From: Guillardia theta CCMP2712
Lineage: Eukaryota; Protista; Cryptophyta
Reading direction: 5' to 3'
Assembly (NCBI RefSeq): GCF_000315625.1
Contig: NW_005434635.1
Coordinates: forward strand, 441,071-505,070
Length of the DNA: 64,000 bases
The translations under genes and the position numbers were made by a program. Of the stretch, positions 2,886-20,700 are shown in pieces. The notes under the pieces were generated by a model. The model had not been told where the DNA came from. It saw only the letters and a program-made list of their open reading frames with translations, and made no database searches. Positions within the stretch are counted from its first letter, which is position 1. Each line of letters starts with the position of its first letter.

Positions 2886-5647
<2,762 letters not shown>

Positions 5648-7395: not shown

Positions 7396-9010
7396 CTCGT
7401 CAGTCTCAGGAGAATCGTGAGTCTGTTCAGTCTCGTCAGCTTCCTCTTCGACGGCAGATGTTCATAGATGGACTTGTCAGCCAGCAAGCTCCTCTTCTTC
7501 GACATCTGCTGCTGCTGCTGCTGCTGCTGCTTCCATTTCCTCTTCTTGGTCTTTGCCATGCTGGATCGAACAGATCGTCAGAGAAACAACACATTGAAGA
7601 GCTGAATGCATGAGGAGGAGTTTGCTGCTTGCAAACAGAAACAAAGAGATGCGAAGAAAAATCGACTTAACATGTTTGGAGCACATCAAGATAAGCGGTG
7701 AGTTTAGATTTGACCTCAAAATGGGGTTCTAAAGAAGGCAGAGCCTTGACAGCATGGAGGACATAAACATGAAAGCATGTTGAGAGCATGTTGAAGCCCA
7801 GGAGTGCATCGAAAGCATGAGCGAGAGGAGCGAGAGGACAGAGCGGGGATGGCGGGCATGGCGGGCATGGCGGGCATGGCAGTAGATAGGTGGCATGCTG
7901 TTTGCATTTGCCATAGAGGGCCAGATCCTAGGAAAGCTTAGCGATGGATAGCTGGTCCTAGCAATCGCCCTAGGAAATGTGTTCCGAAAGGGGTGGGTTC
8001 TTGGCCGAAAGTACCCCTGTGCGAGGAGGATTCAAGTACCCCTACCCACACTTTGACCAGTGAAATGAGTAGTAATATCGCATTATTGGGGGTCCTTCCA
8101 TGTACCACCCCTTCTTTGAGATTTTTTGGTTGACCCCTACCCGGTCATTTTGAACCCTTTGGTCTACCATCTTCCTGGTCGTCGGAAGTTTTCGCTTACA
8201 AAAATGCTGGGGCGGGCCCACATGGATTGGGTTTGTTGGGGATGAGGGCAAACACGGCTATTCTGGTGACTCACACGCAATGCACAGCTGCCGCGATGAA
8301 CCTCCTCGTCCCCATGATCGTCAACCATGTCCTCTCTCCCTCCTACTCGCTCTCCTCCTCCTTCCCCACTCCTGTTTCTCCCTTCCTCGACCTCCTCCTG
8401 GATTGCATGCCACGTTTCACCCGGTTTATTCCTTACTCCATCTCTTCCATTTTCTTTCTCCCTACTCATCTTCCTCTCCCAAGGCGAAATCACTTCAATC
8501 GAATCCTGCATGCTTCTGTCCATCTCCTCCTACCCTTCAGCCCTGCTTTGATTTTCCTCTCCCTGGCGTTCCAACTGCGATGTTACCATACTTTGATCCT
8601 CCGTCCCTCAGCGGCATCTTCCATTCTTACAGCATGGGAGCATATGAGAGATGCTCTCCTCAGCTAGATAATCCTCATGCGTTCCTGTCCTGCAGACTGA
8701 GGGATGATTGATGCTCATCTCATCTGATCTATGTCTGTTTTTGTACTTCCTTGAATCCTCGTTCTCGTCCCCATCTACAGTCAATCTTAGTCTCTTATCT
8801 CAGTGCTGTTAGTCTCTTATCTCAGTGCTGTTAGTCTTTTGTACCTTGCGTCTATCTTACCTGTTTAGCTCTACATCCTCAGCACATGCTCATACCCAAA
8901 CACACTTTGCGCACCCTGCGCTCATTGGTGCCGTGAACATTTTAGAGCATCTCCTGCTTGGAATCGTCTCGTTCCTACCTGCTAGTGGAGGCTGACAGGT
9001 TTGATCGCAG

Positions 9011-9265
9011 ATGTTCACCCGAACGTCTTTGTTGGCGCTCGTTGTCTTGCTCAATGTGAGCCACGTGCGTGGTGAGAGCAAGGTGCGCACGGCGGGTTTC
9101 AGAGCCCAAGGAAACTGACGTGTGTCCATAGAACTGCGACCCGAAGAAAGACTCTGGTTGCAACAAGTTCATCCGTCCTTTCTATCCCCACGAGTGCTGG
9201 GCTGCGTATCCTGGGGGGCCAAACTGCACCAGGCAAGGCTCTGCGAGAATGGGCGGGCGGGGGTG

Positions 9266-9342
<77 letters not shown>

Positions 9343-11715
9343 GGGGGAGGAGAAGGATCAGCGGGACATGCGGGGGGGGCTGGGGGGAGGAAGGGGACGA
9401 GTCCAGGAGGAGGAGGAGGAGGAGGAGGAGAGGTAACGGACGATTCAGGTTCGATCCCACCAAGTCCAAATCGATTCGCTACATCAAGCACGGGCAGTTC
9501 TTCCTCCAGTATGCCGATAACTCCAACCTCAAGGGGTGAGAGCCGGCCTCAGCATTCGGCGAGCCTGACGGGCGGCAGGTACGAGGCGACCGACATCGTT
9601 CAGTTCGGCGACTTCTACACAGTCACCAAGTTCGGAGGCATCACGACATGCAACAGCCCTGACTTCCAGCGCGTCAACGGCATCCTCGGCTTCGGTCTTC
9701 CACAGCAGATGCCGGTGCCTTCCTTTCCCTCCTCTCCCCTCCTCTCTCCCCTCCTCTCTCCCCTCCTCCTTTTTCCTTCTCTCCCTCTGCCTCTTTTTCC
9801 CCTGCTCTCTCCCCTGCTCTCTTCCTACCCCTTTTCCCCCTCCTCCTTTTCCCTTCTCCCCTCCTCCTCATCTCACATTCTTCTCAGATGGAGCTTCCCG
9901 GAATGCCCAGCCCACAGGTGCCGCGTGCTTCCCGCTAGCAGGAAGGAAACTGACTCCACTCATGCAGCTGCCGCTTCCTCTGCTCTTCGATCTCACAGAC
10001 CCCAGGGTCAAGGACAACGCCAAGAACCACATGCTCAGGTACCTGTCGATCCCCCGCCTCCCGCCGCGCTTGCTGAAGTCTGCGGGGACGCAGGAAGAGA
10101 GCCTTCTCCTTCTTTTCCACCGATGACCAGGTGGGGTTCAGGTGGGAAAGGAGGTAGGGCGGTGCCTGACAGCAACGCGATGACAGGCTGAGATCCAGCT
10201 GGGCGGAGTCGATCCAGAGTCGATCATCGGCAAGATGCACTTGACAACCACCATCCAGGTACAGCTCGACTTGAGCTGGGGTCCACAACCTTTGAACCCT
10301 CGGCGCAGCCAAACGACTATGCCGTTCCTGTTCACTCGATCAAGTTCGGAGACGTGGAGCTCCTGCAGTTCTCCAACCCCAACCTGGTCGGCTGCTCCAC
10401 TGCCAGCTCCTGTCCAGCTGACGCCCTCCCTTGCAACGTGCAGAAGGTCCCCATCGGCTGTCAGGGAGACGAATGCCACCCTCCCTTCCTTGCTGGCATT
10501 CTTGACAGGTACAGCTAAAGTTCCCTTCCTCTCCTCGCTCCCCACCCTCCCTCGTCCTCTCCTGTTCTCTCCTCTCCTCTTCACTTCCTCCTCTCTTTCT
10601 GCTTTCCTCTCTCCACCTCTTCTGACTGCTATCAAGTGGAACTTCATGCTTGGTTCTCCCCGATGCTCCTGTCCCCGGCATGTTGAGCAACAAGCCCTTC
10701 ACTCAGGTTCCTCTCCCCGGCCCTCCTCCTCCTTCCCCTATTGCTGCTGCTCCTCCATCTCCCTCCTCCTCATCCTCCCTCCTTCTCTTCCTCCTGACTG
10801 ACGGCCGTTGGCAGTGGAAGCACATGATTGGAGGAAACACAAAGGCCCCCAAGAAGCATGACACTTTCCACGTTAACATCGCAGGCACAGTTGTAAGTAT
10901 CTCCTCCTCCTCCTCTTCTACCTCGCTCTCTCCTCCTCCCCGTCTCTCTCGGCTCCTCTTCCTTCTCCCGCTCTCTCTGCCCCATTCATGTCCTCTTATT
11001 AATGTTTTCTTCCAGTACGACATTCCCTTCTCGGACTGGTACATCACCCAAGGCTCCGACTCGGATCAGTCTTGCGTACAGGTGAGACAGGGAGGAAGAG
11101 GAAGAGGAAGAAGAAGAAGACTAGGGGGAGGACGAGGACGAAGACAACAATATCGGAGAGGAGGAGAGAGGAGCGCTAATGATGTCAACGCAGAGGATGC
11201 CTGGAGGCATGCCAATGGTGCTTGTCGGGGACGTTCTTTTCCGTCGCTATGTGGTGAGCATGCAGCGGGTTGTTGACTCCTCGTCTCAGTGCTGCCCGCT
11301 AGGTCATGTTCGACCTCTCCACCTTTCCCGGCCCAGTCACCATCGGTATCGGAAAGAGAAATCCCAACTACAAGGTCCTTCTCCTCCTCCTCCTCCTCCT
11401 CCTCCTCCTCCTCCTCCTCCTCATCCCCCTCGTTCCCCGGGGCCTGCACCGCTCGTCCTTTCCTCCTGCTGATCCTCCACCCTTGCAGCTCGCTACCAAG
11501 CATGAGACGATCAGCAAGATCACCGCGCACAAGCAGCCTGCACAGGTGAGGAGAGACACAGAGACACAGAGACAGAGAGAGAGAGAGAGCGAGAGCGAGA
11601 GGAGGAGTACTCAAGTCCATGGTTGCAGGTGATTCAGGAGACGAAGGCCATCAGGAGGAACTACCACTACCCCATCGCTGCTGACCGAGTACCGGTGGTG
11701 AGTGCGCGAGCTGAA

Positions 11716-11775
<60 letters not shown>

Positions 11776-11794
11776 AAAAGGCAGACAGTGGAAG

Positions 11795-11875
<81 letters not shown>

Positions 11876-12788
11876 AGCAGGACTATCGCAGAGGAGAGGA
11901 AGGAGACGACTTGTGACTCGCTGGCCAGGTGAACCATGAGAGCACGCAGTATTTCGTCAACGTCTCTATTGGCACTCCCAGGCAGAAGATGCCTGTCATC
12001 TTCGATACCGGTACTCCTTCACTGCCATCAACATCATCATCATCAGCAGCAGCAGCAGCATCCACTCCCGTTCTCCTCCTCCTCCTCCTCCTCCTCCTCC
12101 TCCTCTACTCGTGCTGAACCCCAGCAGGGAGCAGCGTGTTCGGGGTCTTCTCCAAGTGCATGTCGGAGAACGTAGCCGCAGACATTGGACTGCCGGGAAT
12201 TCAGTGCGACTTCGGGCAGGTAGAGGAGGAGGAGGAGGAGGAGGAGGAGGAGGAGGAGGAGGAGGAGAAAGTATGGGAGGTGTTTCAGGATGAAGAAAGG
12301 AGGAAGGGATGTGTGTGTGTGATTGGTCTTCAGGCTTCAGAGAAGACTTTGCTGGACCGCAAGGACATTCTTGACCCAGTGCACTTGAAGGAAAAAAGAA
12401 AGGTAGAGGAGGAGGAGGAGGAGGAGGATTCTGAATGTGCTCCTGCAGGCGCAGCTCAAGAGCCTCGGGGAGAGGAGTCAGGAGCTCCGTGCTGGTATGG
12501 GGAGGAGAAGAGTGAGAAGGGGAGCTGATCGGAGTGACAGGAGGGCCCAAGGCGCTGCTGCAGACTGGAGAGCAGAGCTCGAGGAGCGAATCAAGGTCTG
12601 CTGAGAGAGGAGGGGATGGGGAATGGGGAGGAGAGATGGGGCAGGACGGTGGGAAGGAGAGAGGGGGAAGGAGGAGGGAGGGGAAGGAGAGGAGCGGAGC
12701 TGACATGACATGCAGCAGCATGCTGGTCCCTGTTGCGTTCGTGGGAGTCGCGATGTTGGCTGTCATGCTCGTCAAGTTTCGATCTTGA
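9011..12788 (+). CDS. Pepsin-family (A1) aspartic protease with signal peptide and C-terminal TM anchor; apparently circularly permuted
   Basis: Spliced product: MFTRTSLLALVVLLNVSHVRG.., CTRFDPTKSKS, FFLQYADNSNLKGYEATDIVQFG, NGILGFG, IQLGGVDP, AGILDSGTSCL (split at 10508/10637), LVGDVLFRRYVVMFD..IGIG, then QYFVNVSIGTPRQKMPVIFDTGSS (11929-12135) and a hydrophobic tail MLVPVAFVGVAMLAVMLVKFRS*. Confidence 0.9.
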
Positions 12789-13130
12789 AGTTTTTGAGTC
12801 TTCAAATTGGAACAAAACAAAATTGAAAATCTACCGCATTACCGTTGCCCTCATGCTCCTTCTCCTCTCACCATCTCCGGTATCTCCCCCTTTCCTCTCT
12901 TGCTTGTCTTGTTTGTGTTGTATTCATGTGTGTATTCGTCATTCATTCACATTCAAAAGATAATCTGTACAAATCACTCTCCTCCCAAATTCTCTTTCCT
13001 CGTCCTTCCTTCCTATTTCACAGTCTTCCATCCTCCATCCTAGCCGCTCCTCCCTGTTGAATCCTGTAGTTCCCTCCCCTCCCCTCCCCTCCTCTTCCTT
13101 CCCTTCCCCTCTCAGTCTCCCCTCACACTC

Positions 13131-13892
13131 TCATACGGCGCATCGGATGACGACGAGAAACTCCGAGCAGCGCTTAGCGATGGCCAGGATGTTCTGCTTC
13201 AAGTCAGCCTAAACTTTTCCCTCCTCCTCCTCCTCGTTCCCTCCTCCTCCTCCTCGTTCCCCTCCTCCTCCTCCTCGTTCCCCTCCTCCTCCTCCTCCTC
13301 CTCGTTCCCGTCCTCCTCCTCCTCGTTCCCGTCCTCCTCCTCCTCGTTCCCCTCCTCCTCCTCCTCGTTCCCGTCCTCCTCCTCCTCGTTCCCCTCCTCC
13401 TCCTCCTCCTCTCACCTCTGCACGCAGGTTGATCTCTTCGCACATGTACTGCAGGGTGTGACGCCCATCGAGGAAGGGGAGCATTCTGATTGACATGCAG
13501 CATCAAGAACAGCAGGAGGGAGAGAGGCTAACGGGGGAAGGGCAAGAGGACAAGTAGCAGCAGCAGCAGCAGCAGCAGCAGGAGAAGGAGGAGGAGGACG
13601 AGGAGGAGGAGGAGGAGCAGCAGCAGCAGCAGGAGGAGAAGGAGGAGCAGCAGTGGCAAGGACAGAAGCGCTTCCAGGAGGTCTCACCTCTTGAGGCGGG
13701 ACCACAATCTCGCCTTTCCCTTCTTTGACAGACTGCCAAACCCGGGGGGAGAAGGAGAGGAGAGGTGCCTGACATGAAAGCGCGAGCAGCAAGAGCAATG
13801 GAATCAGAGGACATGAAGGAACAGCACGAGCAGACGAGGGGCAGAGGGAGGGACAACAGGAAGACGAGGACGAGGACGAGGAGAAAATGGAG

Positions 13893-15044: not shown

Positions 15045-17318
15045 AGACAATAACTATCCATGAAAGCAGCAGTATCATGAGGAAGAAGAGACATGCCGGC
15101 AACTCTCGCGAGGTCGCTCTTCTTCCTCCTGATCAGCTTGATGACGCTGCTCTCAAGCTCATCCCAGCGCGACACATTGAGCTCTGCCTGCTGGTCAGCT
15201 CCTCTCCTCCTCTCGCTCAAGGCGCATGCTCCACCTGCCAGCGTCTGGATCTCCACGTCATGCTGCAACGCCTCTAGAGTCTTTCCCTGCGAGAAGACTT
15301 GCAGCGCTTTCTGCAGGCGCAGCTTCGGAGAGCCTTGAGCCCTCCATCCCCTGCTGACCCGCGAGCTCTTCCTCCTCGTGCTTCTTGCCCTCTCCTCCTT
15401 GCCCTTGTCCTCCTTTCCTCTCTCCTCCTCCCCCTTGCGCGAAGGCTCTTCCGCGGGCATGAAACGATCGAAGGACTCGGCGATGTTTTCTCCTTCTCTC
15501 TCCGAGACTCCGACGGTCGAGAGGTTCACCTCGGGCGCAATCAAGTAGATGCTCGCCTTGCTCACGCTCTGAACCACTCGTCCCTTAGACCATCTCTCCT
15601 GCTCTCTTGGTAAATAGGAAGGTGAGGAGAACAAGAAGGGAGGAGAACAAGAAGGGAGGAGAGAGAAGAGAGGAGACGACGAATACATATCGTTGACGGG
15701 AAGGAGGGGTGGAAGGGGAGGAAGAGAAGGGGAGGAGGAGAAGGGGAGGAGGAGAAGGGGAGGAGGAGAAGGGGAGGAGGAGAGGGGAAGGAAGCAACGA
15801 GGAATTTCTCTCAGCGACACATTGATATTCGTCCTCACCAGGTGCTGGGACAGCACGAACACTCGCTGCAACGGGATGTCAAGCTCGTCTGAAAGTCTCT
15901 TGAGCGTCTGCCATTGCCAAGTCACTTGACGTCTCGCCCTGCCAGCAGACCTTCAAGGGATCCGCCTTGCGCACTACCAGCGCCAAGTCCAACGAGCAGT
16001 CGGCCTGTGCGCAGCCCTCAGGGATGCCGGATGCAGCGGAGGAGAGGAGGGGAGGAGGGGAGGAGGGGAGGAGAGGAGGAGGGGAGGAGGAGGAGAAGGA
16101 TTGGAGGTCGAGGGGAGGAGGTGGAAAGGATCAGTTGAATGGGTGAGCAGGTGGAGAGGACGTGGTAGAGGGGACGAGGAGAAGTAGAAGAGGTGGAGGG
16201 AAAGGGGTAGAGGAATGGAGGCGGATGAGAGACGGAGGAGAGGAGAGGGTGGAGGGGAGGCGGAGGGGAGGAGGACCGGGAGTTCTCTTAAAATCTCATC
16301 TCTTGGCTGCAGAAGGAGCAAGGTGTCGTACTTCCGCGGTGACGGAGCGTTTGCTGCTGTCGCGGCTCCGACCCGCACGTGCAGGTTGAGCCATGAGTTG
16401 ACGAGGACGCTCGCAGACCCGTGGACATTCAAGCTCTCGAACACCTGGGAAGTGCTGAGGAGAGCAGGAGGAGGGAGGGAGGGAGGGAGGGAGGGAGGGA
16501 GGGAGGGAGGGAGGGAGGGAGGGAGGGAGGGAGGGAGGGAGGGAGGGAAGGAGGGAGGGAGGGAGGGAGGGAGGGAGGGAGGGAGACAGGATCAGAAAGA
16601 GGATCAGTACCTCGACGACTTCGGCCACCAGCGAGCTTTTCTGTCGCTCAATCTCGACATGGCTGGGGTTGTTCCCCACTAAGTCAGTGCTGCTGCCCTC
16701 GAGCTTCGGCTCGTTCTCTTTCGACGCTCGTTCCTGCGACGAGATGTTCCCCTGCACGAGGTCTTGGATGCGTTGAACCTCCATGCTCAGATACCCGCTG
16801 CGAAGCTGCTCATGCACCCAAACCAGCCCCGCCGATCGAGCCACCTCTTTCCAATGGTTCAGCGACTTGCAGCCATGATGCACCACCAGCACGAACGTGA
16901 ACGTCGTCAGCCTCTCGTGTCTCTGCGAGAGCTGCTTAGAGCCTCGCAGGATCTGGTGACTCTCCTGGCTTATGCTCCCCTCGCTGTACGCCCGCTGGTC
17001 CAGGGAGATCGGGTGCCCAACAAACACAAGAGCATCGAACGTGACCTCGATGTCTTGCCCGCAGAGCGCTGGCTTAGGAGCCATCAGCTTGGCTATCCCG
17101 TTCGCAGGAACACCGAGGACACTTTGAGGAAGCAGCTGGACTGCCGATCGCCTGCTCACGAGCTCCCGTCCTGCTTCCTCCACCTTATCCAACGCTGGCG
17201 CCTCCGAACCGCCTGCCATAGTGACCGACATGACTATACGATGACCGCTATCACCTTTGACGACGATAGCGCCTGCTAGGAGATGGTGGCTGGTGCTGTG
17301 CAAGAAGCAACCTCCCAT
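13131..17318 (-). CDS. NPRL3: GATOR1 complex subunit NPRL3/Npr3 homolog
   Basis: N-terminal longin-like AIVVKGDSGHRIVM, KLMAPKPALCGQDIEVTFDALVFVGHP, HEQLRSGYLSMEV, YDTLLLL, LSDELDIPLQRVFVLSQHLV-WSKGRVV and C-terminal RMLPFLDGRHTLQYMCEE, recognised from memory of the family. The start Met is uncertain. Confidence 0.8.
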
Positions 17319-17750
17319 CCCTCCTCCTTCTCCTCCTCCTCCTCCTCCTCCTCCTCCTCCCACGCCTCCTTCCTCTTTCATCCTTGTGGCCTTCCCCGAG
17401 GGTCTCAAGTGGATGTTCCTTTCACAGAACATTTCAGGTAAATCGATTGTTCTTTGACAGAACATTTACTTGTTCTTCGTACGGAACTTTTTAATCGGTC
17501 GCCTGCCTACAGGCCCTACGAGCCGAAGCGACACGGGAGAGCCGCCATGGTCAGGGAAGATGAGAGGAGGAGGAGGAGGGGAAGAGAAGCGGGCTAGAGG
17601 AGGAAGAGGGAGAGGGAGAGAGCACAGAGAACAGAGAAGAGAGAACAGAGAAGAGAGCAGGAAGTAGCTGAGTCAAGTCTGAAACTGTAGACCTGAAGTG
17701 CAAACCTGCAAGTCTCCCTTGTGTTGCATTCTTTGCGCTAAGATTGCACG

Positions 17751-20700
17751 ATGCAACTGCGAGACATCTCAGTTCGAATATCGTTGGGTATTTTTCTCGC
17801 CAGCCTTCATTTGTGCTCTTGTCAAACTTCGCCATGGTTTAACGCTTCAGAAACTGTCGCATACCTTGCAAGAGATTGGAAGGGCTCGGGGTATGCAGAC
17901 GGCAGTACAACAGGAGCAAGCTATCTATACTCACCTTTGTCCAGTGGCTCCTGCCTTCCTCAACCTGGCTGGCCTTCGCCTTGCCCGGTAGATCAGATCG
18001 ACTTGATCTTACTCGACCCAGCGCAATATGTGGGGACGGAACAAGTGAAGATGAACTTGACTTTGAGGTTCCACGGAGACGTGTTTCAGAGCTCACCGGG
18101 GGCAGACAACTACTACGGTATGCCAGATGGTTGTGCGTATGAGCGAAACCATACTGTCCATGCAGACTTTAACGTTTCAGATGGAACTGTAATCATGACT
18201 ATTCAGAAAACAACAAGTGACTATATCGCTTGCGCTCTCAACTTCGGGACCTCTTACTCACAGCATAAATCGTGGAACGATAACTCAAAGGCAGAGACCA
18301 TCCCCTATCAGAGATGTTCGAGCAACGCTGCCTGCTATCCCAGCTTGGATGGAACTCAATTCAAAGGAAAGTTCCGATTAGGCAAGAGCACAGCCATTGA
18401 TCCCCGGGGTTCGGAGTACAGACTCGACCTGGTCCTTGGGTTTCCTTATGACAATGCAGGCTCAAATTCTTTCAGCTTCAGCAGCAATTGGATTCTCGCC
18501 TACTCTCCCACTAAGAATGTCATGACCTCTTTCCCGTCCTCCTTCGCCACTGTCGCCGCCTCGCAGACATTCTTGTACACGTTGACTTGGAGGGATCGGT
18601 TTGAAGGTCCGAACAATGAGTGGTTCAAGAACTACATGGCTACCATCAACTCAGTCAACCCGCCCTTCGGCCCTCAGGATGGAGGAACGCACATCACGGT
18701 GTACGGGAGCTACTTCCCTCCGACGGATGTCACACACACCAGGAATGGCTCCATCGTACTGATCAACGGAACGAGTGAGCCTCAGGAGTGCTGTGACAGT
18801 CGGTACATCAGTCAGAACATGTTCGTCTGCCGCCTGCCCCGAGTCGCTTGCCTTAATAACAACCCGCCAAACTTCGCTTGCGCGCAACCGGGCGTTTCGT
18901 TTGAAAACAAGACCGTCGCTCTGGGAATCAGGCCGTTTGCAAAAGGCTACAACGGAACCATTCCGGCTTCGAAACTCGATGAGTTTGTGGAACACGAAGG
19001 CACATGGGAGCTGATTGACGAGGACATCTACGGGGGGAAGTACATCGATCCAGCCAAACGAAACCCCAACCAGACCCAGATCCTCCAGGCCTCCAGCTCG
19101 CAGGCTTTGACGACTTGCTGTCCTGTTTGCATCTCCCCAGGAGACCCCAAGTGCAGGTTCACCATCACGCAACTGAGCCCTGGGGTTTACAACGTCAGCA
19201 TTCCTGCCATCATGTCGCCAGGCAAGCCGGGACCGTGCGACCCCGCCACCAACATGATCAACAACTCCTTCATCGCCGGGATCGATCGCTCCCTCGACAA
19301 CTTCTCGGCCAGCGTTCCCTTGTCCATCACCTCCTGCTCAAGTCTGAGCGGTACATGTAGCAAATATCCAAGGATAAGTATCCGGACGTCTTGCAAGAGA
19401 CTCTACTGGTCTTTGGGCTCCATCTCGTCCTACACCCCTTCTGGTCAGACAGTAGCGATATACAACTGGGTGAGCAAGCAGACGTGCGAACGGAGGATGA
19501 GATGTGTTGCTGGACCCTGCATGCTTACCTTCCTCGCTCCTCAGAGCAGTTCTGTGACGGAGTTTCAATGGAGGACCTCTTCGCCTCAAGTTGGAATCTA
19601 CACGCAGTATCCTTCTTCTTCGTTTGACGTAAATGGATTCCTCATGAACCTTGCTATGCTCATCAACGCAGAAGATTGGCGGCGCCTTCAGCTTGTTGTA
19701 AGTTACTCACTGAAGCCAGCGAGTGCACTCACGCTTCTGACAGACATTGGTCTCCTCCTCGAGCCTTCAGAGTCAAAGTATTGGGACCTTGTTTGCTGTC
19801 CGCTCGTACGAGAAGAGCAGCCCCATCACGTGTGTGCCGACCATGGCTGGCGGGTCTTGCTATGACTTCAACATGATCATCTACATCGTGAGCGAAGGGC
19901 CCGGGGGAGCCTCAGCCTCGGTCTCCTTGAAGAACCTGACCACGAGGAGCAAAGCGGCCACAGGCGACCCGTCGCTGAGAATGCTCAACATCATGGAGAT
20001 CTACATCGACCAGGGGTTGAGCAGCAAGTCGACGCTGCCGTCCGGGCACATCATTGTAAGTGTTGGTGTCTTGCTGCTTCGGTTGCCATGACTCTAGACC
20101 CACCAGGAATTCATCAAGGTTCAGTATCCTGGCGTGCTTCAATTCCAAAACCTCCAGATTCAGTATTCTGCTGAAGTGATTGCGATTCATGGTGATCCAA
20201 GCGCAGGGTGAAAAAGCAAGTTTGGGGCTATGCAGCGTTGGGAGTGACCAGGACGGGCGGAAGCGATCTGACAGCAACCGGTGCAGCAGCGTCTTGCGCC
20301 AACCTCAAGCTGACCTGATTCCCCTCAGTGAATTACGAGACGATACAGTACAACACAACATCATCTGCAAGGGTGACGGAGACAGAGAAACAAACTGTCG
20401 ACTGACACTCGTGATGAAGGGGCTTGGAGAAGATTTCGCTTCCAAACAAGGGCAACTTCGATGGAACAACGGAGACTCGGCGACCAAGTTTGATCGTCTT
20501 GCGAGTCGATCTCCACATGACTGCCATGCAGACAGATCATCATTCCTATCCATCAGAATGGACTTATGCAGCAGTCGCTGACATTTGAGGTCTGTCAATG
20601 TTTCCTCTTGACATCTCTCAGTTGAAATCTCCAGGTCCGCATTTTCACCGCCGTGAACTCAAGTCTGCTTGTGGACCCTCAGGTCTTTCTCACGGAGGTA

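What the first reader, a model, noticed from the sequence alone, without database searches (positions are those of the whole stretch)
9011..12788. Circularly permuted pepsin-family aspartic protease: the first catalytic DTG segment is moved to the C-terminus
Established: A1 proteases run prosegment - Y.G.ISIGTP.Q.F.V.FDTGSS - C..C..FDPSKSST - flap Tyr - DGILGL - D(T/S)GTS - ILGDVF...FD..IG. Seen: after a signal peptide (ATG 9011), the spliced frame (exons 9011-9082, 9132-9232, 9449-9535, 9579..) begins at the Cys loop (ECWAAYPGGPNCTRFDPTKSKS..FFLQYAD) with no DTG before it. It continues through NGILGFG, ILDSGTS and LVGDVLFRRYVVMFD..IGIG. It then carries on without a stop through a ~50-aa basic linker into RVPVVNHESTQYFVNVSIGTPRQKMPVIFDTGSSVFGV (11690-12150), exactly the missing N-terminal piece, and ends in a TM helix. 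Both catalytic Asp and the flap Tyr are intact. Inference: a natural, probably active, membrane-anchored circular permutant, plausibly formed by tandem duplication, fusion and trimming. I do not know of a described natural permutation of the pepsin fold at this site.
Basis: partly seen in the sequence, partly recalled or inferred. Interest (0 to 1): 0.9.

Follow-up and report, generated by a model that had tools for sequence, protein, structure and literature searches.

The report
Circularly permuted membrane-anchored pepsin-type protease
This expressed Guillardia theta gene encodes a membrane-anchored pepsin-type protease in which the first ~42 residues of the fold, carrying one of the two catalytic aspartates, sit at the end of the chain. 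Every pepsin-type gene of this alga that I could read has the same order, and I found no paper describing it.

Summary
The gene at 9011-12788 (+) is GUITHDRAFT_109483 of Guillardia theta. Spliced transcript contigs from three studies cover it in one piece from 2 nt before the ATG to 49 nt past the stop. The product has 545 aa: signal peptide, then pepsin residues ~47-326 (flap Tyr79, Asp249-Ser-Gly), then a conserved basic 44-aa linker, then pepsin residues 2-42 (Asp433-Thr-Gly-Ser), a tail and a TM helix.

The order does not depend on splicing. Seventeen G. theta loci, many of them single open reading frames, have body then N-piece; none has the canonical order. Relatives in Teleaulax, Rhodomonas, Hemiselmis, Hanusia, Baffinella and one Ancoracysta transcript share the order, and both catalytic motifs are invariant in 61 aligned members.

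AlphaFold2 gives a pepsin fold (Z 22.3 to human pepsin) with the relocated strands modelled confidently. A two-chain docking test passed (0.80 against 0.02 for the best control).

Activity, the origin by duplication and a propeptide role for the linker remain unproven; linker profiles found no known propeptide.

Six literature searches found no description. This scan had already reached the same verdict on at least eight paralogues elsewhere in this genome.

The parts
9011..12788 (+). Whole coding region of the permuted A1 protease (GUITHDRAFT_109483 as re-modelled): 23 exons, 1638 nt, 545 aa. Exons: 9011-9082, 9132-9232, 9449-9535, 9579-9714, 9888-9917, 9968-10038, 10094-10130, 10187-10258, 10309-10386, 10444-10508, 10637-10706, 10815-10892, 11016-11081, 11194-11253, 11303-11374, 11489-11545, 11629-11697, 11929-12010, 12128-12219, 12334-12402, 12449-12494, 12541-12595, 12716-12788.
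   Evidence: model. (spliced contigs X1 rec2 1618 nt depth 335, X2 rec3 1689 nt, X7 rec4 1676 nt; 13 GT..AG joints listed). (constant +2 offset between contig and model over its whole length). (orthologues P0130-P0133 are collinear).
9011..9073 (+). Signal peptide, residues 1-21 (hydrophobic core SLLALVVLL, ending VRG).
   Evidence: Read from the sequence. Orthologues all begin with a comparable hydrophobic N-terminus followed by ESK[ND]CDP.
9074..9232 (+). Cys-rich N-terminal stretch (Cys26, 34, 46, 56). It includes the loop ECWAAYPGGPNC, which lines up with the pepsin Cys45-Cys50 loop. This is the new N-terminus of the fold.
   Evidence: Equating the loop with pepsin Cys45-Cys50 is my own reading of the sequence; the fold alignment starts the body at model residue 41 = pepsin 47.
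9449..11374 (+). Body of the protease, equivalent to pepsin ~47-326. It holds the flap Tyr79 (codon 9510-9512), NGILGFG (9676-9696), catalytic Asp249 in ILDSGTS (codon 10504-10506), LVGDVLF (11221-11241) and the last C-lobe strand IGIG (11342-).
   Evidence: Pfam Asp 33-306. VIA-align model 41-361 = pepsin 47-326, Z 22.3, rmsd 2.5 A, 261 aligned. Invariant columns. Coordinates.
10387..10443 (+). Reading through it would insert 19 residues.
   Evidence: joint 10385/10443 (cut +1) in X1, X2 and X7. The segment is absent from orthologues.
9233..9448 (+). GC-AG intron of 216 nt, in frame, made largely of a (GGAGCA)n repeat.
   Evidence: In one search table 8, pieces 9130-9229 and 9446-9534 are adjacent in all three contigs.
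11354..11682 (+). Linker, residues 359-402 (44 aa, 9 Lys/Arg against 2 Asp/Glu). It is encoded by the end of exon 11303-11374, exon 11489-11545 and most of exon 11629-11697. It joins the C-terminal strand of the C-lobe to the relocated first strand.
   Evidence: composition. (Tyr5, Lys16, Lys21 invariant and Tyr37 nearly invariant in 16 subfamily members). (low pLDDT at 376-386 in the orthologue model).
11683..12150 (+). Relocated N-terminal piece of the fold, equivalent to pepsin 2-42: DRVPVVNH...YFVNVSIGTPRQK...VIFDTGSSVFGVF. Catalytic Asp433 is at codon 12004-12006. The piece spans exons 11629-11697 (end), 11929-12010 and 12128-12219 (start).
   Evidence: phmmer against PDB: P0130 403-443 = human pepsin 1psn_A 2-42, E 3e-7. 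Pfam Asp 1-38. Six-frame hit at window 11947-12045. Four strands with block pLDDT 84-93. Docking test.
12151..12719 (+). Tail between the fold and the membrane, residues ~444-523. It holds Cys445 and Cys461 and a charged, probably helical stretch.
   Evidence: helices 448-453, 468-475 and 482-508 in the orthologue model.
12720..12788 (+). Transmembrane helix (residues 524-541, mean Kyte-Doolittle hydropathy 2.5 over 19 aa), a 4-residue tail KFRS and the stop codon.
   Evidence: Transcript contigs run on to 12838.

Best explanation
The gene encodes a type I membrane protein whose luminal or extracellular part is a pepsin-like (MEROPS A1) aspartic endopeptidase with a circularly permuted chain.

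After the signal peptide the chain starts at the equivalent of pepsin residue ~47. It builds the rest of the N-lobe (flap Tyr79) and the whole C-lobe (Asp249-Ser-Gly). A flexible, basic, conserved 44-residue linker follows. Then come the four strands that normally open the fold (pepsin 2-42), including Asp433-Thr-Gly-Ser, and the chain ends in a spacer and a TM helix.

The relocated strands insert into the N-lobe of the same chain. The usual two-aspartate cleft is thus restored, and the enzyme cuts peptides by the ordinary general acid-base mechanism next to a membrane.

Shown: the chain order, its transcription, its conservation across a family, and the invariance of both catalytic motifs and the flap Tyr.

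Predicted: the pepsin fold and the docking of the relocated piece against the DSG loop.

Inferred: catalytic activity, intramolecular rather than intermolecular insertion, and an origin by tandem duplication followed by loss of both outer ends.
For: Transcripts: single spliced contigs from three studies run from 9009 to ~12838 and are collinear with the model. Raw RNA reads confirm the last two junctions on the + strand.

Family: 17 G. theta loci show body then N-piece, many in a single uninterrupted ORF, and none is canonical. Of 120 database relatives, 87 are permuted by motif order and 0 are canonical. Orthologues at 76-85% identity from other cryptophyte transcriptomes are collinear over 1-545.

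Catalytic residues: Tyr79, Asp249-Ser-Gly and Asp433-Thr-Gly-Ser are invariant in 61 sequences.

Homology map: residues 403-443 = pepsin 2-42 by sequence. Residues 41-361 = pepsin 47-326 by structure, Z 22.3, rmsd 2.5 A, 261 aligned. Foldseek top hits are all A1 proteases with probability 1.00.

Fold: the AlphaFold2 model of the 85%-identical orthologue has mean pLDDT 80.1 and pTM 0.78. The relocated piece forms strands 403-410, 414-421, 426-433 and 439-443 at block pLDDT 84-93.

Docking test of body (55-362) with piece (398-447): score 0.80, best of 3 controls 0.02. That mark was reached by 51 of 78 solved complexes and 2 of 108 mismatched pairs. The runs agree in at least 93% of contacts and the partner's pLDDT is at least 81. 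The interface includes 247-253 (DSG loop) and 121-126.
Against: No biochemical data exist. I could not read model coordinates, so the Asp249-Asp433 distance was not measured.

The docking pass may partly reflect the model's memory of the A1 fold, since two-chain cathepsin D is solved. It was also calibrated mostly on microbial pairs.

Structure and docking were run on the orthologue P0130, not on the window's own protein. The transcript-supported sequence has no stored reference, and the annotated one (P0135) lacks an exon.

The flap reads Tyr-Ala-Asp rather than Tyr-Gly-Thr or Tyr-Gly-Asp.

By a simple D[TS]G[STA] pattern, some divergent environmental members show no second catalytic motif in the body. 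Inactive members may therefore exist in the wider family.
Confidence: 0.75

Rival explanations
1. The protein has the permuted pepsin fold but is not a protease. It would be a binding or regulatory protein, like the xylanase inhibitors (TAXI), pregnancy-associated glycoproteins or other inactive A1 homologues.
For: Activity is untested. By a simple D[TS]G[STA] pattern, some divergent family members show no second catalytic motif in the body (P0192, P0213, P0244, P0249, P0253, P0256, P0259). The large paralogue number (about 20 loci) would fit a recognition role.
Against: In the window's protein and in all 61 aligned members, both D[TS]G[ST] motifs, the flap Tyr and both hydrophobic-hydrophobic-Gly motifs are invariant. 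Known inactive A1 homologues usually lose these.
Confidence: 0.12
2. The relocated strand does not fold back into its own chain. It inserts into the body of a neighbouring molecule, so the active unit is a domain-swapped dimer or chain on the membrane.
For: The 44-aa linker is modelled as flexible (pLDDT below 50 at 376-386). The piece docks as a separate chain, so the contact does not need covalent continuity. The TM anchor would concentrate the molecules in two dimensions.
Against: The monomer model folds the piece into its own body with high confidence. In pepsin the chain's first and last strands lie in the same interdomain sheet (established knowledge of the fold), so a 44-aa linker is more than long enough for intramolecular closure. 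No evidence for oligomers was sought or found.
Confidence: 0.1
3. The permuted order is an artefact. Either two genes or mis-ordered exons were joined by the gene model or the assembly, or the N-piece exon belongs to a second, canonical protease gene downstream.
For: The gene has 22 short, repeat-rich introns, which makes a sequence-only model risky. The public annotation of this gene is indeed wrong in three places.
Against: RNA contigs from three studies carry the same order in one molecule through to the stop and 3' UTR. At least eight paralogues carry it in one uninterrupted ORF. Transcriptome-derived orthologues from other genera carry it too. The exons after the N-piece encode no further A1 sequence, and there is no other A1 match in the window.
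Confidence: 0.02

Closest known systems
Pepsin-like aspartic proteases (MEROPS family A1, Pfam Asp PF00026): pepsin, renin, cathepsin D, chymosin
   Same: Same bilobal fold in prediction (Z 22.3 to human pepsin). Same two D[TS]G motifs, flap Tyr and hydrophobic-hydrophobic-Gly motifs. Pfam score far above the cut-off.
   Different: The chain order is [47-326]-linker-[2-42] instead of 1-326. No N-terminal propeptide was detected. A family-specific Cys pattern is present (Cys254 and Cys319 invariant).
Membrane-anchored A1 proteases: BACE1/BACE2 (memapsins), plasmepsin V / Toxoplasma ASP5
   Same: Type I topology with a signal peptide, a luminal A1 domain, a single C-terminal TM helix and a short cytosolic tail (my knowledge of those enzymes). 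The likely mode of action is cutting substrates near a membrane.
   Different: Those enzymes have the canonical chain order. Here the strand carrying the first catalytic Asp lies about 90 residues before the TM helix, so the catalytic N-lobe strand itself is the part tethered to the membrane. No specific sequence relationship to BACE or plasmepsin V was found; the top PDB matches are renin, pepsin and cathepsin D.
Two-chain cathepsin D (light chain plus heavy chain)
   Same: It shows that the A1 fold works when the N-terminal part is a separate polypeptide held non-covalently. Cathepsin D light chains matched the relocated piece (1lya_A 8-43).
   Different: In cathepsin D the break arises by post-translational cleavage near residue 98 and the gene order is canonical. 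Here the gene itself is reordered at residue ~43-47.
Plant-specific insert ('swaposin') of plant A1 proteases
   Same: It is the circular permutation that the literature search returned in connection with A1 proteases (PMC8683733).
   Different: There the saposin-like insert is permuted relative to saposins. The protease fold itself is not permuted.
Concanavalin A and other natural circular permutants
   Same: A natural protein whose chain order differs from that of its homologues (bioRxiv 10.1101/2020.10.28.360099, listed).
   Different: Concanavalin A is permuted after translation, by cleavage and re-ligation. Here the permutation is in the gene and the mRNA.

Membership tests
MEROPS A1 / Pfam Asp (PF00026) pepsin-like aspartic proteases | Significant match to the family profile above the curated cut-off | tested here: met
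   P0135 (annotated product of this gene) scores 115.2 bits against a cut-off of 19.9; the orthologue P0130 scores 114.3 bits.
MEROPS A1 / Pfam Asp (PF00026) pepsin-like aspartic proteases | Two catalytic Asp in D[TS]G[TS] motifs, one per lobe | tested here: met
   ILDSGTS (Asp249) and FDTGSS (Asp433) are present in the window's protein and invariant in 61 family members.
MEROPS A1 / Pfam Asp (PF00026) pepsin-like aspartic proteases | Flap Tyr (pepsin Tyr75) and the hydrophobic-hydrophobic-Gly motifs that pack behind each catalytic loop | tested here: met
   Tyr79 is invariant. G121-I122-x-G124 and G333-D334 are invariant. Residues 121-126 contact the VIFD strand in the docking model.
MEROPS A1 / Pfam Asp (PF00026) pepsin-like aspartic proteases | Bilobal pepsin fold | tested here: met
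   The AlphaFold2 model of the orthologue has pLDDT 80.1. Foldseek probability is 1.00 to renin, chymosin and plasmepsin X. VIA-align gives Z 22.3, rmsd 2.5 A and 261 aligned residues to human pepsin 1psn. This is a prediction, not a solved structure.
MEROPS A1 / Pfam Asp (PF00026) pepsin-like aspartic proteases | Canonical chain order: N-lobe strand with the first DTG precedes the flap and the C-lobe | tested here: not met
   In P0130, Pfam profile positions 41-306 match residues 55-347 and positions 1-38 match residues 414-451; in P0135, positions 33-306 match residues 56-357. Pepsin 2-42 = residues 403-443. Pepsin 47-326 = residues 41-361.
MEROPS A1 / Pfam Asp (PF00026) pepsin-like aspartic proteases | N-terminal propeptide (zymogen form) | tested here: inconclusive
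   Only ~35 Cys-rich residues lie between the signal peptide and the body. No A1_Propeptide hit appeared at E up to 10 on linker pieces. Linker profiles found no zymogen propeptide in the PDB. Propeptides are short and divergent, so a blank is weak evidence.
MEROPS A1 / Pfam Asp (PF00026) pepsin-like aspartic proteases | Pepstatin-sensitive endopeptidase activity at acidic pH | not testable with these tools
   This needs the expressed protein.
Membrane-anchored A1 proteases (BACE-like topology) | Signal peptide plus a single C-terminal TM helix with a short cytosolic tail | tested here: met
   The N-terminal hydrophobic core is at residues 7-15. The hydropathy maximum is 2.5 over residues 523-541, followed by KFRS and the stop. 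The same layout is seen in paralogues.

The most novel reading that the evidence does not exclude
The conserved basic linker sits exactly where a propeptide sits in canonical zymogens, immediately before pepsin residue 1. It could be a relocated, internal propeptide: it would block the cleft until it is cut or displaced. The active enzyme would then be a two-chain protease whose small chain (first catalytic strand plus TM helix) tethers the large chain to the membrane.

Under this reading the family arose from a tandem A1 polyprotein of the kind still seen in dinoflagellate-like transcripts (P0333, P0436), by loss of both outer ends.
Probability: 0.3. Interest if true: 0.85.

Novelty: new variant of a known kind. 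Interest (0 to 1): 0.78.

Why it matters
The pepsin fold is among the most studied enzyme folds and drug targets (renin, BACE1, plasmepsins, cathepsin D). As far as my searches reach, a natural member with a rearranged chain has not been described.

- Fold tolerance. A whole, conserved, expressed family with the first catalytic strand moved to the C-terminus shows that the fold tolerates a break at residue ~43-47 and a join of its termini.
- Evolution. It offers a natural test case for how circular permutants arise, and for how the two-lobed A1 fold relates to its duplicated half-barrel origin.
- Regulation. It raises a concrete question about zymogen control: there is no N-terminal propeptide, and a conserved linker lies in the propeptide's topological place.
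- Annotation. Domain-order-blind labels ('Peptidase A1 domain-containing protein') hide the rearrangement, and profile tools report the family as a truncated Asp domain plus a stray TAXi_N fragment.
- Biology. This appears to be the only kind of A1 protease that cryptophytes have. Whatever A1 proteases do in these algae is therefore done by the permuted form.

Tried and rejected
1. Linker as a recognisable propeptide.
- Pfam on five linker-plus-N-piece segments at E up to 10 gave no A1_Propeptide hit.
- Profiles of the linker from two subfamilies (A2, A3) searched against all PDB sequences at E up to 10 found only chance hits (Atg3, DprA, NudI) and no zymogen.
- The idea is not refuted, only unsupported by sequence.

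2. Remnant duplication at the ends. I asked whether the C-terminal piece continues into a second copy of pepsin 45-75. Pfam matches end at profile position 31-38 in eight of ten tails. The two longer ones (1-54, 1-81) gain no score. There is no solid evidence.

3. P0220 as a tandem intermediate. This 704-aa protein, with the order DTG-DSG-DTG-DSG, ranked among the family profile's top hits. Its two units are 100% identical over 334 aa, and it is a canonical dinoflagellate-type cathepsin D. It is probably an assembly repeat and is not an intermediate of this family.

4. ESM Atlas structure search returned only canonical A1 clusters, TM by query at most 0.51. It added nothing on distribution.

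5. The look-up of encoding contigs for P0135 found no record, so annotated neighbours were not obtained that way.

6. Naming of distant hits. Most are unnamed environmental sequences. Named ones are cryptophytes, apart from one Ancoracysta twista transcript.

7. The tree used only one canonical lineage as outgroup. It says nothing about where in the A1 tree the family arose.

Full report
**What is in the sequence**

The window is C39:441071-505070 of an 87.1-Mb, 669-contig genome. The genome is Guillardia theta CCMP2712, because its ORFs are identical to GUITHDRAFT proteins.

Reading the three forward frames of 8000-13300, I built a GT-AG exon chain from the ATG at 9011 to the TGA at 12786-12788.
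- signal peptide;
- a Cys loop followed by FDPTKSKS;
- the flap LQYAD;
- NGILGFG;
- ILDSGTS;
- LVGDVLFRRYVVMFD...IGIG;
- a basic linker;
- DRVPVVNHESTQYFVNVSIGTPRQKMPVIFDTGSSVFGVF;
- a charged tail;
- a hydrophobic helix and KFRS.

**Transcripts**

Seventeen of the 21 listed public runs hold part of the stretch. I laid four of them on 7800-13300.

Three runs from three different studies each contain one spliced contig:
- X1 record 2: 1618 nt, depth 335;
- X2 record 3: 1689 nt;
- X7 record 4: 1676 nt.

These contigs run from exon 1 or 2 to about 12838. Thirteen junctions are listed as GT..AG joints, and each equals one of my exon borders after the stated cut offset. The other nine introns lie in repeats that the tool skips. 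However, the contig coordinates of all eight listed pieces differ from my spliced model by a constant +2, so every intron is removed as modelled.

The contigs brought two refinements:
- The intron 9233-9448 uses a GC donor.

Raw RNA-seq reads of a 2026 run (X18) are 3'-biased. They confirm the last two junctions with 25 and 33 reads, first mate on the + strand. The runs X1, X2 and X7 are only 'guessed' to be RNA, but contigs that lack all 22 introns can only come from mRNA.

The final model has 23 exons and 545 aa.

The public annotation of this gene (P0135, GUITHDRAFT_109483, 531 aa) differs in three places:
- ten spurious residues, from a GT donor used instead of the GC donor;
- exon 11629-11697 skipped, which encodes the end of the linker and the first relocated strand;
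- a 3-nt shift at the last acceptor.

Transcriptome-derived orthologues agree with my model at all three places. They are P0130 from Teleaulax (85% identical) and P0131 to P0133 (76-80%).

**The permutation does not depend on splicing**

A six-frame search of the whole genome with Pfam Asp found 29 matches at about 20 loci. No body match starts before profile position 37.

At eight loci, profile positions ~40-309 are followed downstream by positions 1-30 to 1-74, and both matches were reported with the same open-frame length, which one search showed to be a single uninterrupted ORF at each. Translating 14 fetched loci showed complete ORFs with this order: signal peptide, DSGT, then DTGS 160-290 residues later, then a TM helix.

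Six further loci, searched exon by exon with a family profile, gave the same body, linker, N-piece order wherever both pieces were within range.

In total, 17 loci are permuted and 4 show the body only in the stretch fetched. None has an N-piece upstream of the body.

The Asp profile from position ~33-43 to ~306-309 hits first, and the start of the profile (Asp or TAXi_N 1-25/38) hits some 100 residues later.

**Relatives elsewhere**

Two word-indexed searches found 161 and 147 relatives. Named ones come from Guillardia, Hanusia, Rhodomonas, Hemiselmis, Teleaulax and Baffinella. Most of the rest are metagenome or metatranscriptome proteins.

By motif order, 87 of the first 120 are permuted and none is canonical. 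The other 33 lack the N-piece pattern, and many of those are fragments.

A profile of 61 members was searched against 1.84 billion representatives. It gave 4859 hits at E up to 0.001 and 120 at E up to 1e-30. Among the best 150, the full-length proteins again have the DTGS after the body. The single exception is P0220, discussed below.

One permuted member, P0183, is from the transcriptome of Ancoracysta twista, which is not a cryptophyte. In a quick tree of the body region it falls outside the clade that holds all named cryptophyte sequences, together with several long-branched unnamed sequences. I cannot tell whether this reflects age, gene transfer or contamination.

The window's gene sits in a well-supported subfamily of eight sampled rows, next to its Teleaulax orthologue.

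**Is the fold restored?**

In the 61-sequence alignment the invariant columns include Tyr79, Asp249-Ser-Gly, Asp433-Thr-Gly-Ser, Gly121-Ile122, Gly124 and Gly333-Asp334. The numbering is that of P0130, which happens to coincide with my model at these residues.

By sequence, residues 403-443 align to human pepsin 2-42, and residues 63-221 align to renin in the canonical body.

An AlphaFold2 model of P0130, built with the family alignment, has mean pLDDT 80.1 and pTM 0.78. The relocated piece forms four strands at block pLDDT 84-93, and the linker at 376-386 is below 50.

Foldseek's best PDB matches are all A1 proteases, with probability 1.00 and target-normalised TM 0.55-0.69. VIA-align places model residues 41-361 on pepsin 47-326 with Z 22.3, rmsd 2.5 A and 261 aligned residues.

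Sequence and structure together therefore map the whole pepsin chain onto this protein as [47-326]-linker-[2-42].

Because model coordinates are not returned, I also ran a two-chain test of body (55-362) against piece (398-447). The result:
- score 0.80, best of three controls 0.02;
- that mark was reached by 51 of 78 solved complexes and 2 of 108 mismatched pairs;
- the runs agree in at least 93% of contacts, and the partner's pLDDT is at least 81.

The confident interface includes the DSG loop (247-253) and the GILGFG segment (121-126) against the VIFDTGS strand, as expected for an assembled catalytic centre.

This is a model's confidence, not a measurement. It may draw on memory of the A1 fold, since two-chain cathepsin D is solved. 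It was also done on the orthologue.

**The linker**

The linker is 44 residues long, with nine Lys/Arg and two Asp/Glu, and it is not free to vary. In the window's subfamily Tyr5, Lys16 and Lys21 of the segment are invariant and Tyr37 nearly so. In the larger subfamily the pattern K-L-x-L-L-[KR]-G-x-E-x-M-[YF]-P-A-E-H recurs.

Topologically it occupies the place of a propeptide, directly before pepsin residue 1. By eye, its [KR]-h-x-h-x-[KR] stretch and a Tyr next to a basic residue some eight residues before the first strand recall the pepsinogen propeptide. That comparison comes from my own knowledge of zymogens.

No tool supported homology. Pfam gave no A1_Propeptide hit, and two linker profiles found no zymogen in the PDB. 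I therefore keep the internal-propeptide idea as the most novel reading that is not excluded, not as the best explanation.

**Origin**

The textbook route to a circular permutant is tandem duplication, in-frame fusion and loss of both outer ends. I found no such intermediate inside this family.

P0220 looked like one, but it is two 100% identical canonical units and is probably an assembly repeat.

While collecting canonical A1 sequences I did meet in-frame tandem A1 proteins of dinoflagellate type whose units are 85% (P0333) and 72% (P0436) identical. In these, the C-lobe of one unit runs without a stop into the propeptide and N-lobe of the next. That is the arrangement from which trimming would give a permutant with a propeptide-derived linker. 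This shows the route is available in nature, not that it was taken here.

**Surroundings**

The neighbouring long ORFs match glycosyltransferase family 90 (2886-4355, +), NPR3 (16299-17465, -) and an IPT/TIG domain (17751-19862, +). There is no second A1 gene in the window, so the N-piece cannot belong to a neighbouring canonical gene.

**Literature and earlier notes**

Six full-text searches found no paper on a permuted pepsin fold or on cryptophyte A1 proteases. The only permutation linked to A1 enzymes was the plant-specific 'swaposin' insert (PMC8683733). The library lacks most subscription journals, so absence is not proof.

This scan's own notes show that at least eight paralogues on other pieces of this genome were followed up with the same verdict. 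Other first-stage notes on this same stretch raise the propeptide idea. I reached the family-wide conclusion, before opening those notes. They are not independent evidence.

**Verdict**

The gene is a transcribed member of a conserved family of circularly permuted, membrane-anchored A1 proteases, which appear to be the only A1 form in cryptophytes.

Activity, intramolecular assembly, the role of the linker and the evolutionary route are inferences.

I rate it a new variant of a known kind, with interest 0.78.

Noticed in passing
window 9233-9262, 11629-11697, 12713-12716: The public protein model GUITHDRAFT_109483 (P0135, 531 aa) is wrong in three places compared with the transcripts and orthologues. 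It has ten spurious residues (QGSARMGGRG) from a GT donor used instead of the GC donor at 9233. It skips exon 11629-11697 (23 aa, including the first relocated strand). It also has a 3-nt shift at the last acceptor.
   Followed up: yes
window 9233-9448; also 9716-9887, 11698-11928, 12011-12127, 12220-12333: The introns are short and largely made of microsatellites: (GGAGCA)n at 9270-9340, (GACA)n at 11712-11772, (GAGGAC)n at ~11797-11840, and long CTC/GAG runs. The 216-nt GC-AG intron is in frame with no stop, so retaining it would add 72 low-complexity residues rather than truncate the protein.
   Followed up: partly
window 8395-9015 and 9009-9011: The X2 and X7 transcript contigs start at 9009, two bases before the ATG and right at an acceptor-like cag|ATG (the X1 contig starts at exon 2). 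A separate low-depth contig (X1 record 1, depth 4.5 against 335) covers 8395-9015. The 5' UTR may lie in an upstream exon or vary between transcripts. The coding start itself is supported by the orthologues.
   Followed up: no
window 12753: In the raw RNA reads of run X18, position 12753 (A, inside the TM-helix exon) reads G in 5 of 30 and T in 4 of 30 reads. The three contig runs show A. This could be strain variation or sequencing error.
   Followed up: no
proteins P0333, P0436 (also P0320, P0220), not in the window: These are in-frame tandem A1 proteases of dinoflagellate type (nearest named relatives Prorocentrum and Oxyrrhis). The C-lobe of one unit runs without a stop into the propeptide and N-lobe of the next. 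The units are 85% identical in P0333 and 72% in P0436, which looks like real polyproteins. In P0220 they are 100% identical and in P0320 97% over 196 aa, which may be assembly repeats.
   Followed up: partly
protein P0183 (EukProt EP00164 Ancoracysta twista): A permuted A1 protease (DSGT at 201, DTGS at 490, linker ~100 aa) occurs in the transcriptome of a predatory protist that is not a cryptophyte. In a quick tree it branches outside the named cryptophyte clade. Age, transfer and contamination are not distinguished.
   Followed up: partly
proteins P0192, P0213, P0244, P0249, P0253, P0256, P0259: These divergent environmental members of the permuted family keep the C-terminal DTGS. By a simple D[TS]G[STA] pattern they show no second catalytic motif in the body, so they may be inactive derivatives.
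   Followed up: no
window 2886-4355 (+), 16299-17465 (-), 17751-19862 (+): The neighbouring long ORFs match glycosyltransferase family 90 (E 9e-13), the N-terminus of NPR3 (E 1.5e-8) and an IPT/TIG domain (E 1.8e-7). None is related to the protease.
   Followed up: partly
window 8168-8535 and 13136-13300: These are transcribed stretches flanking the gene (X1 depth 32-40 upstream, 257 downstream), with their own splice-like loose ends at 8348-8362 and 13220-13279. They probably belong to neighbouring genes.
   Followed up: no
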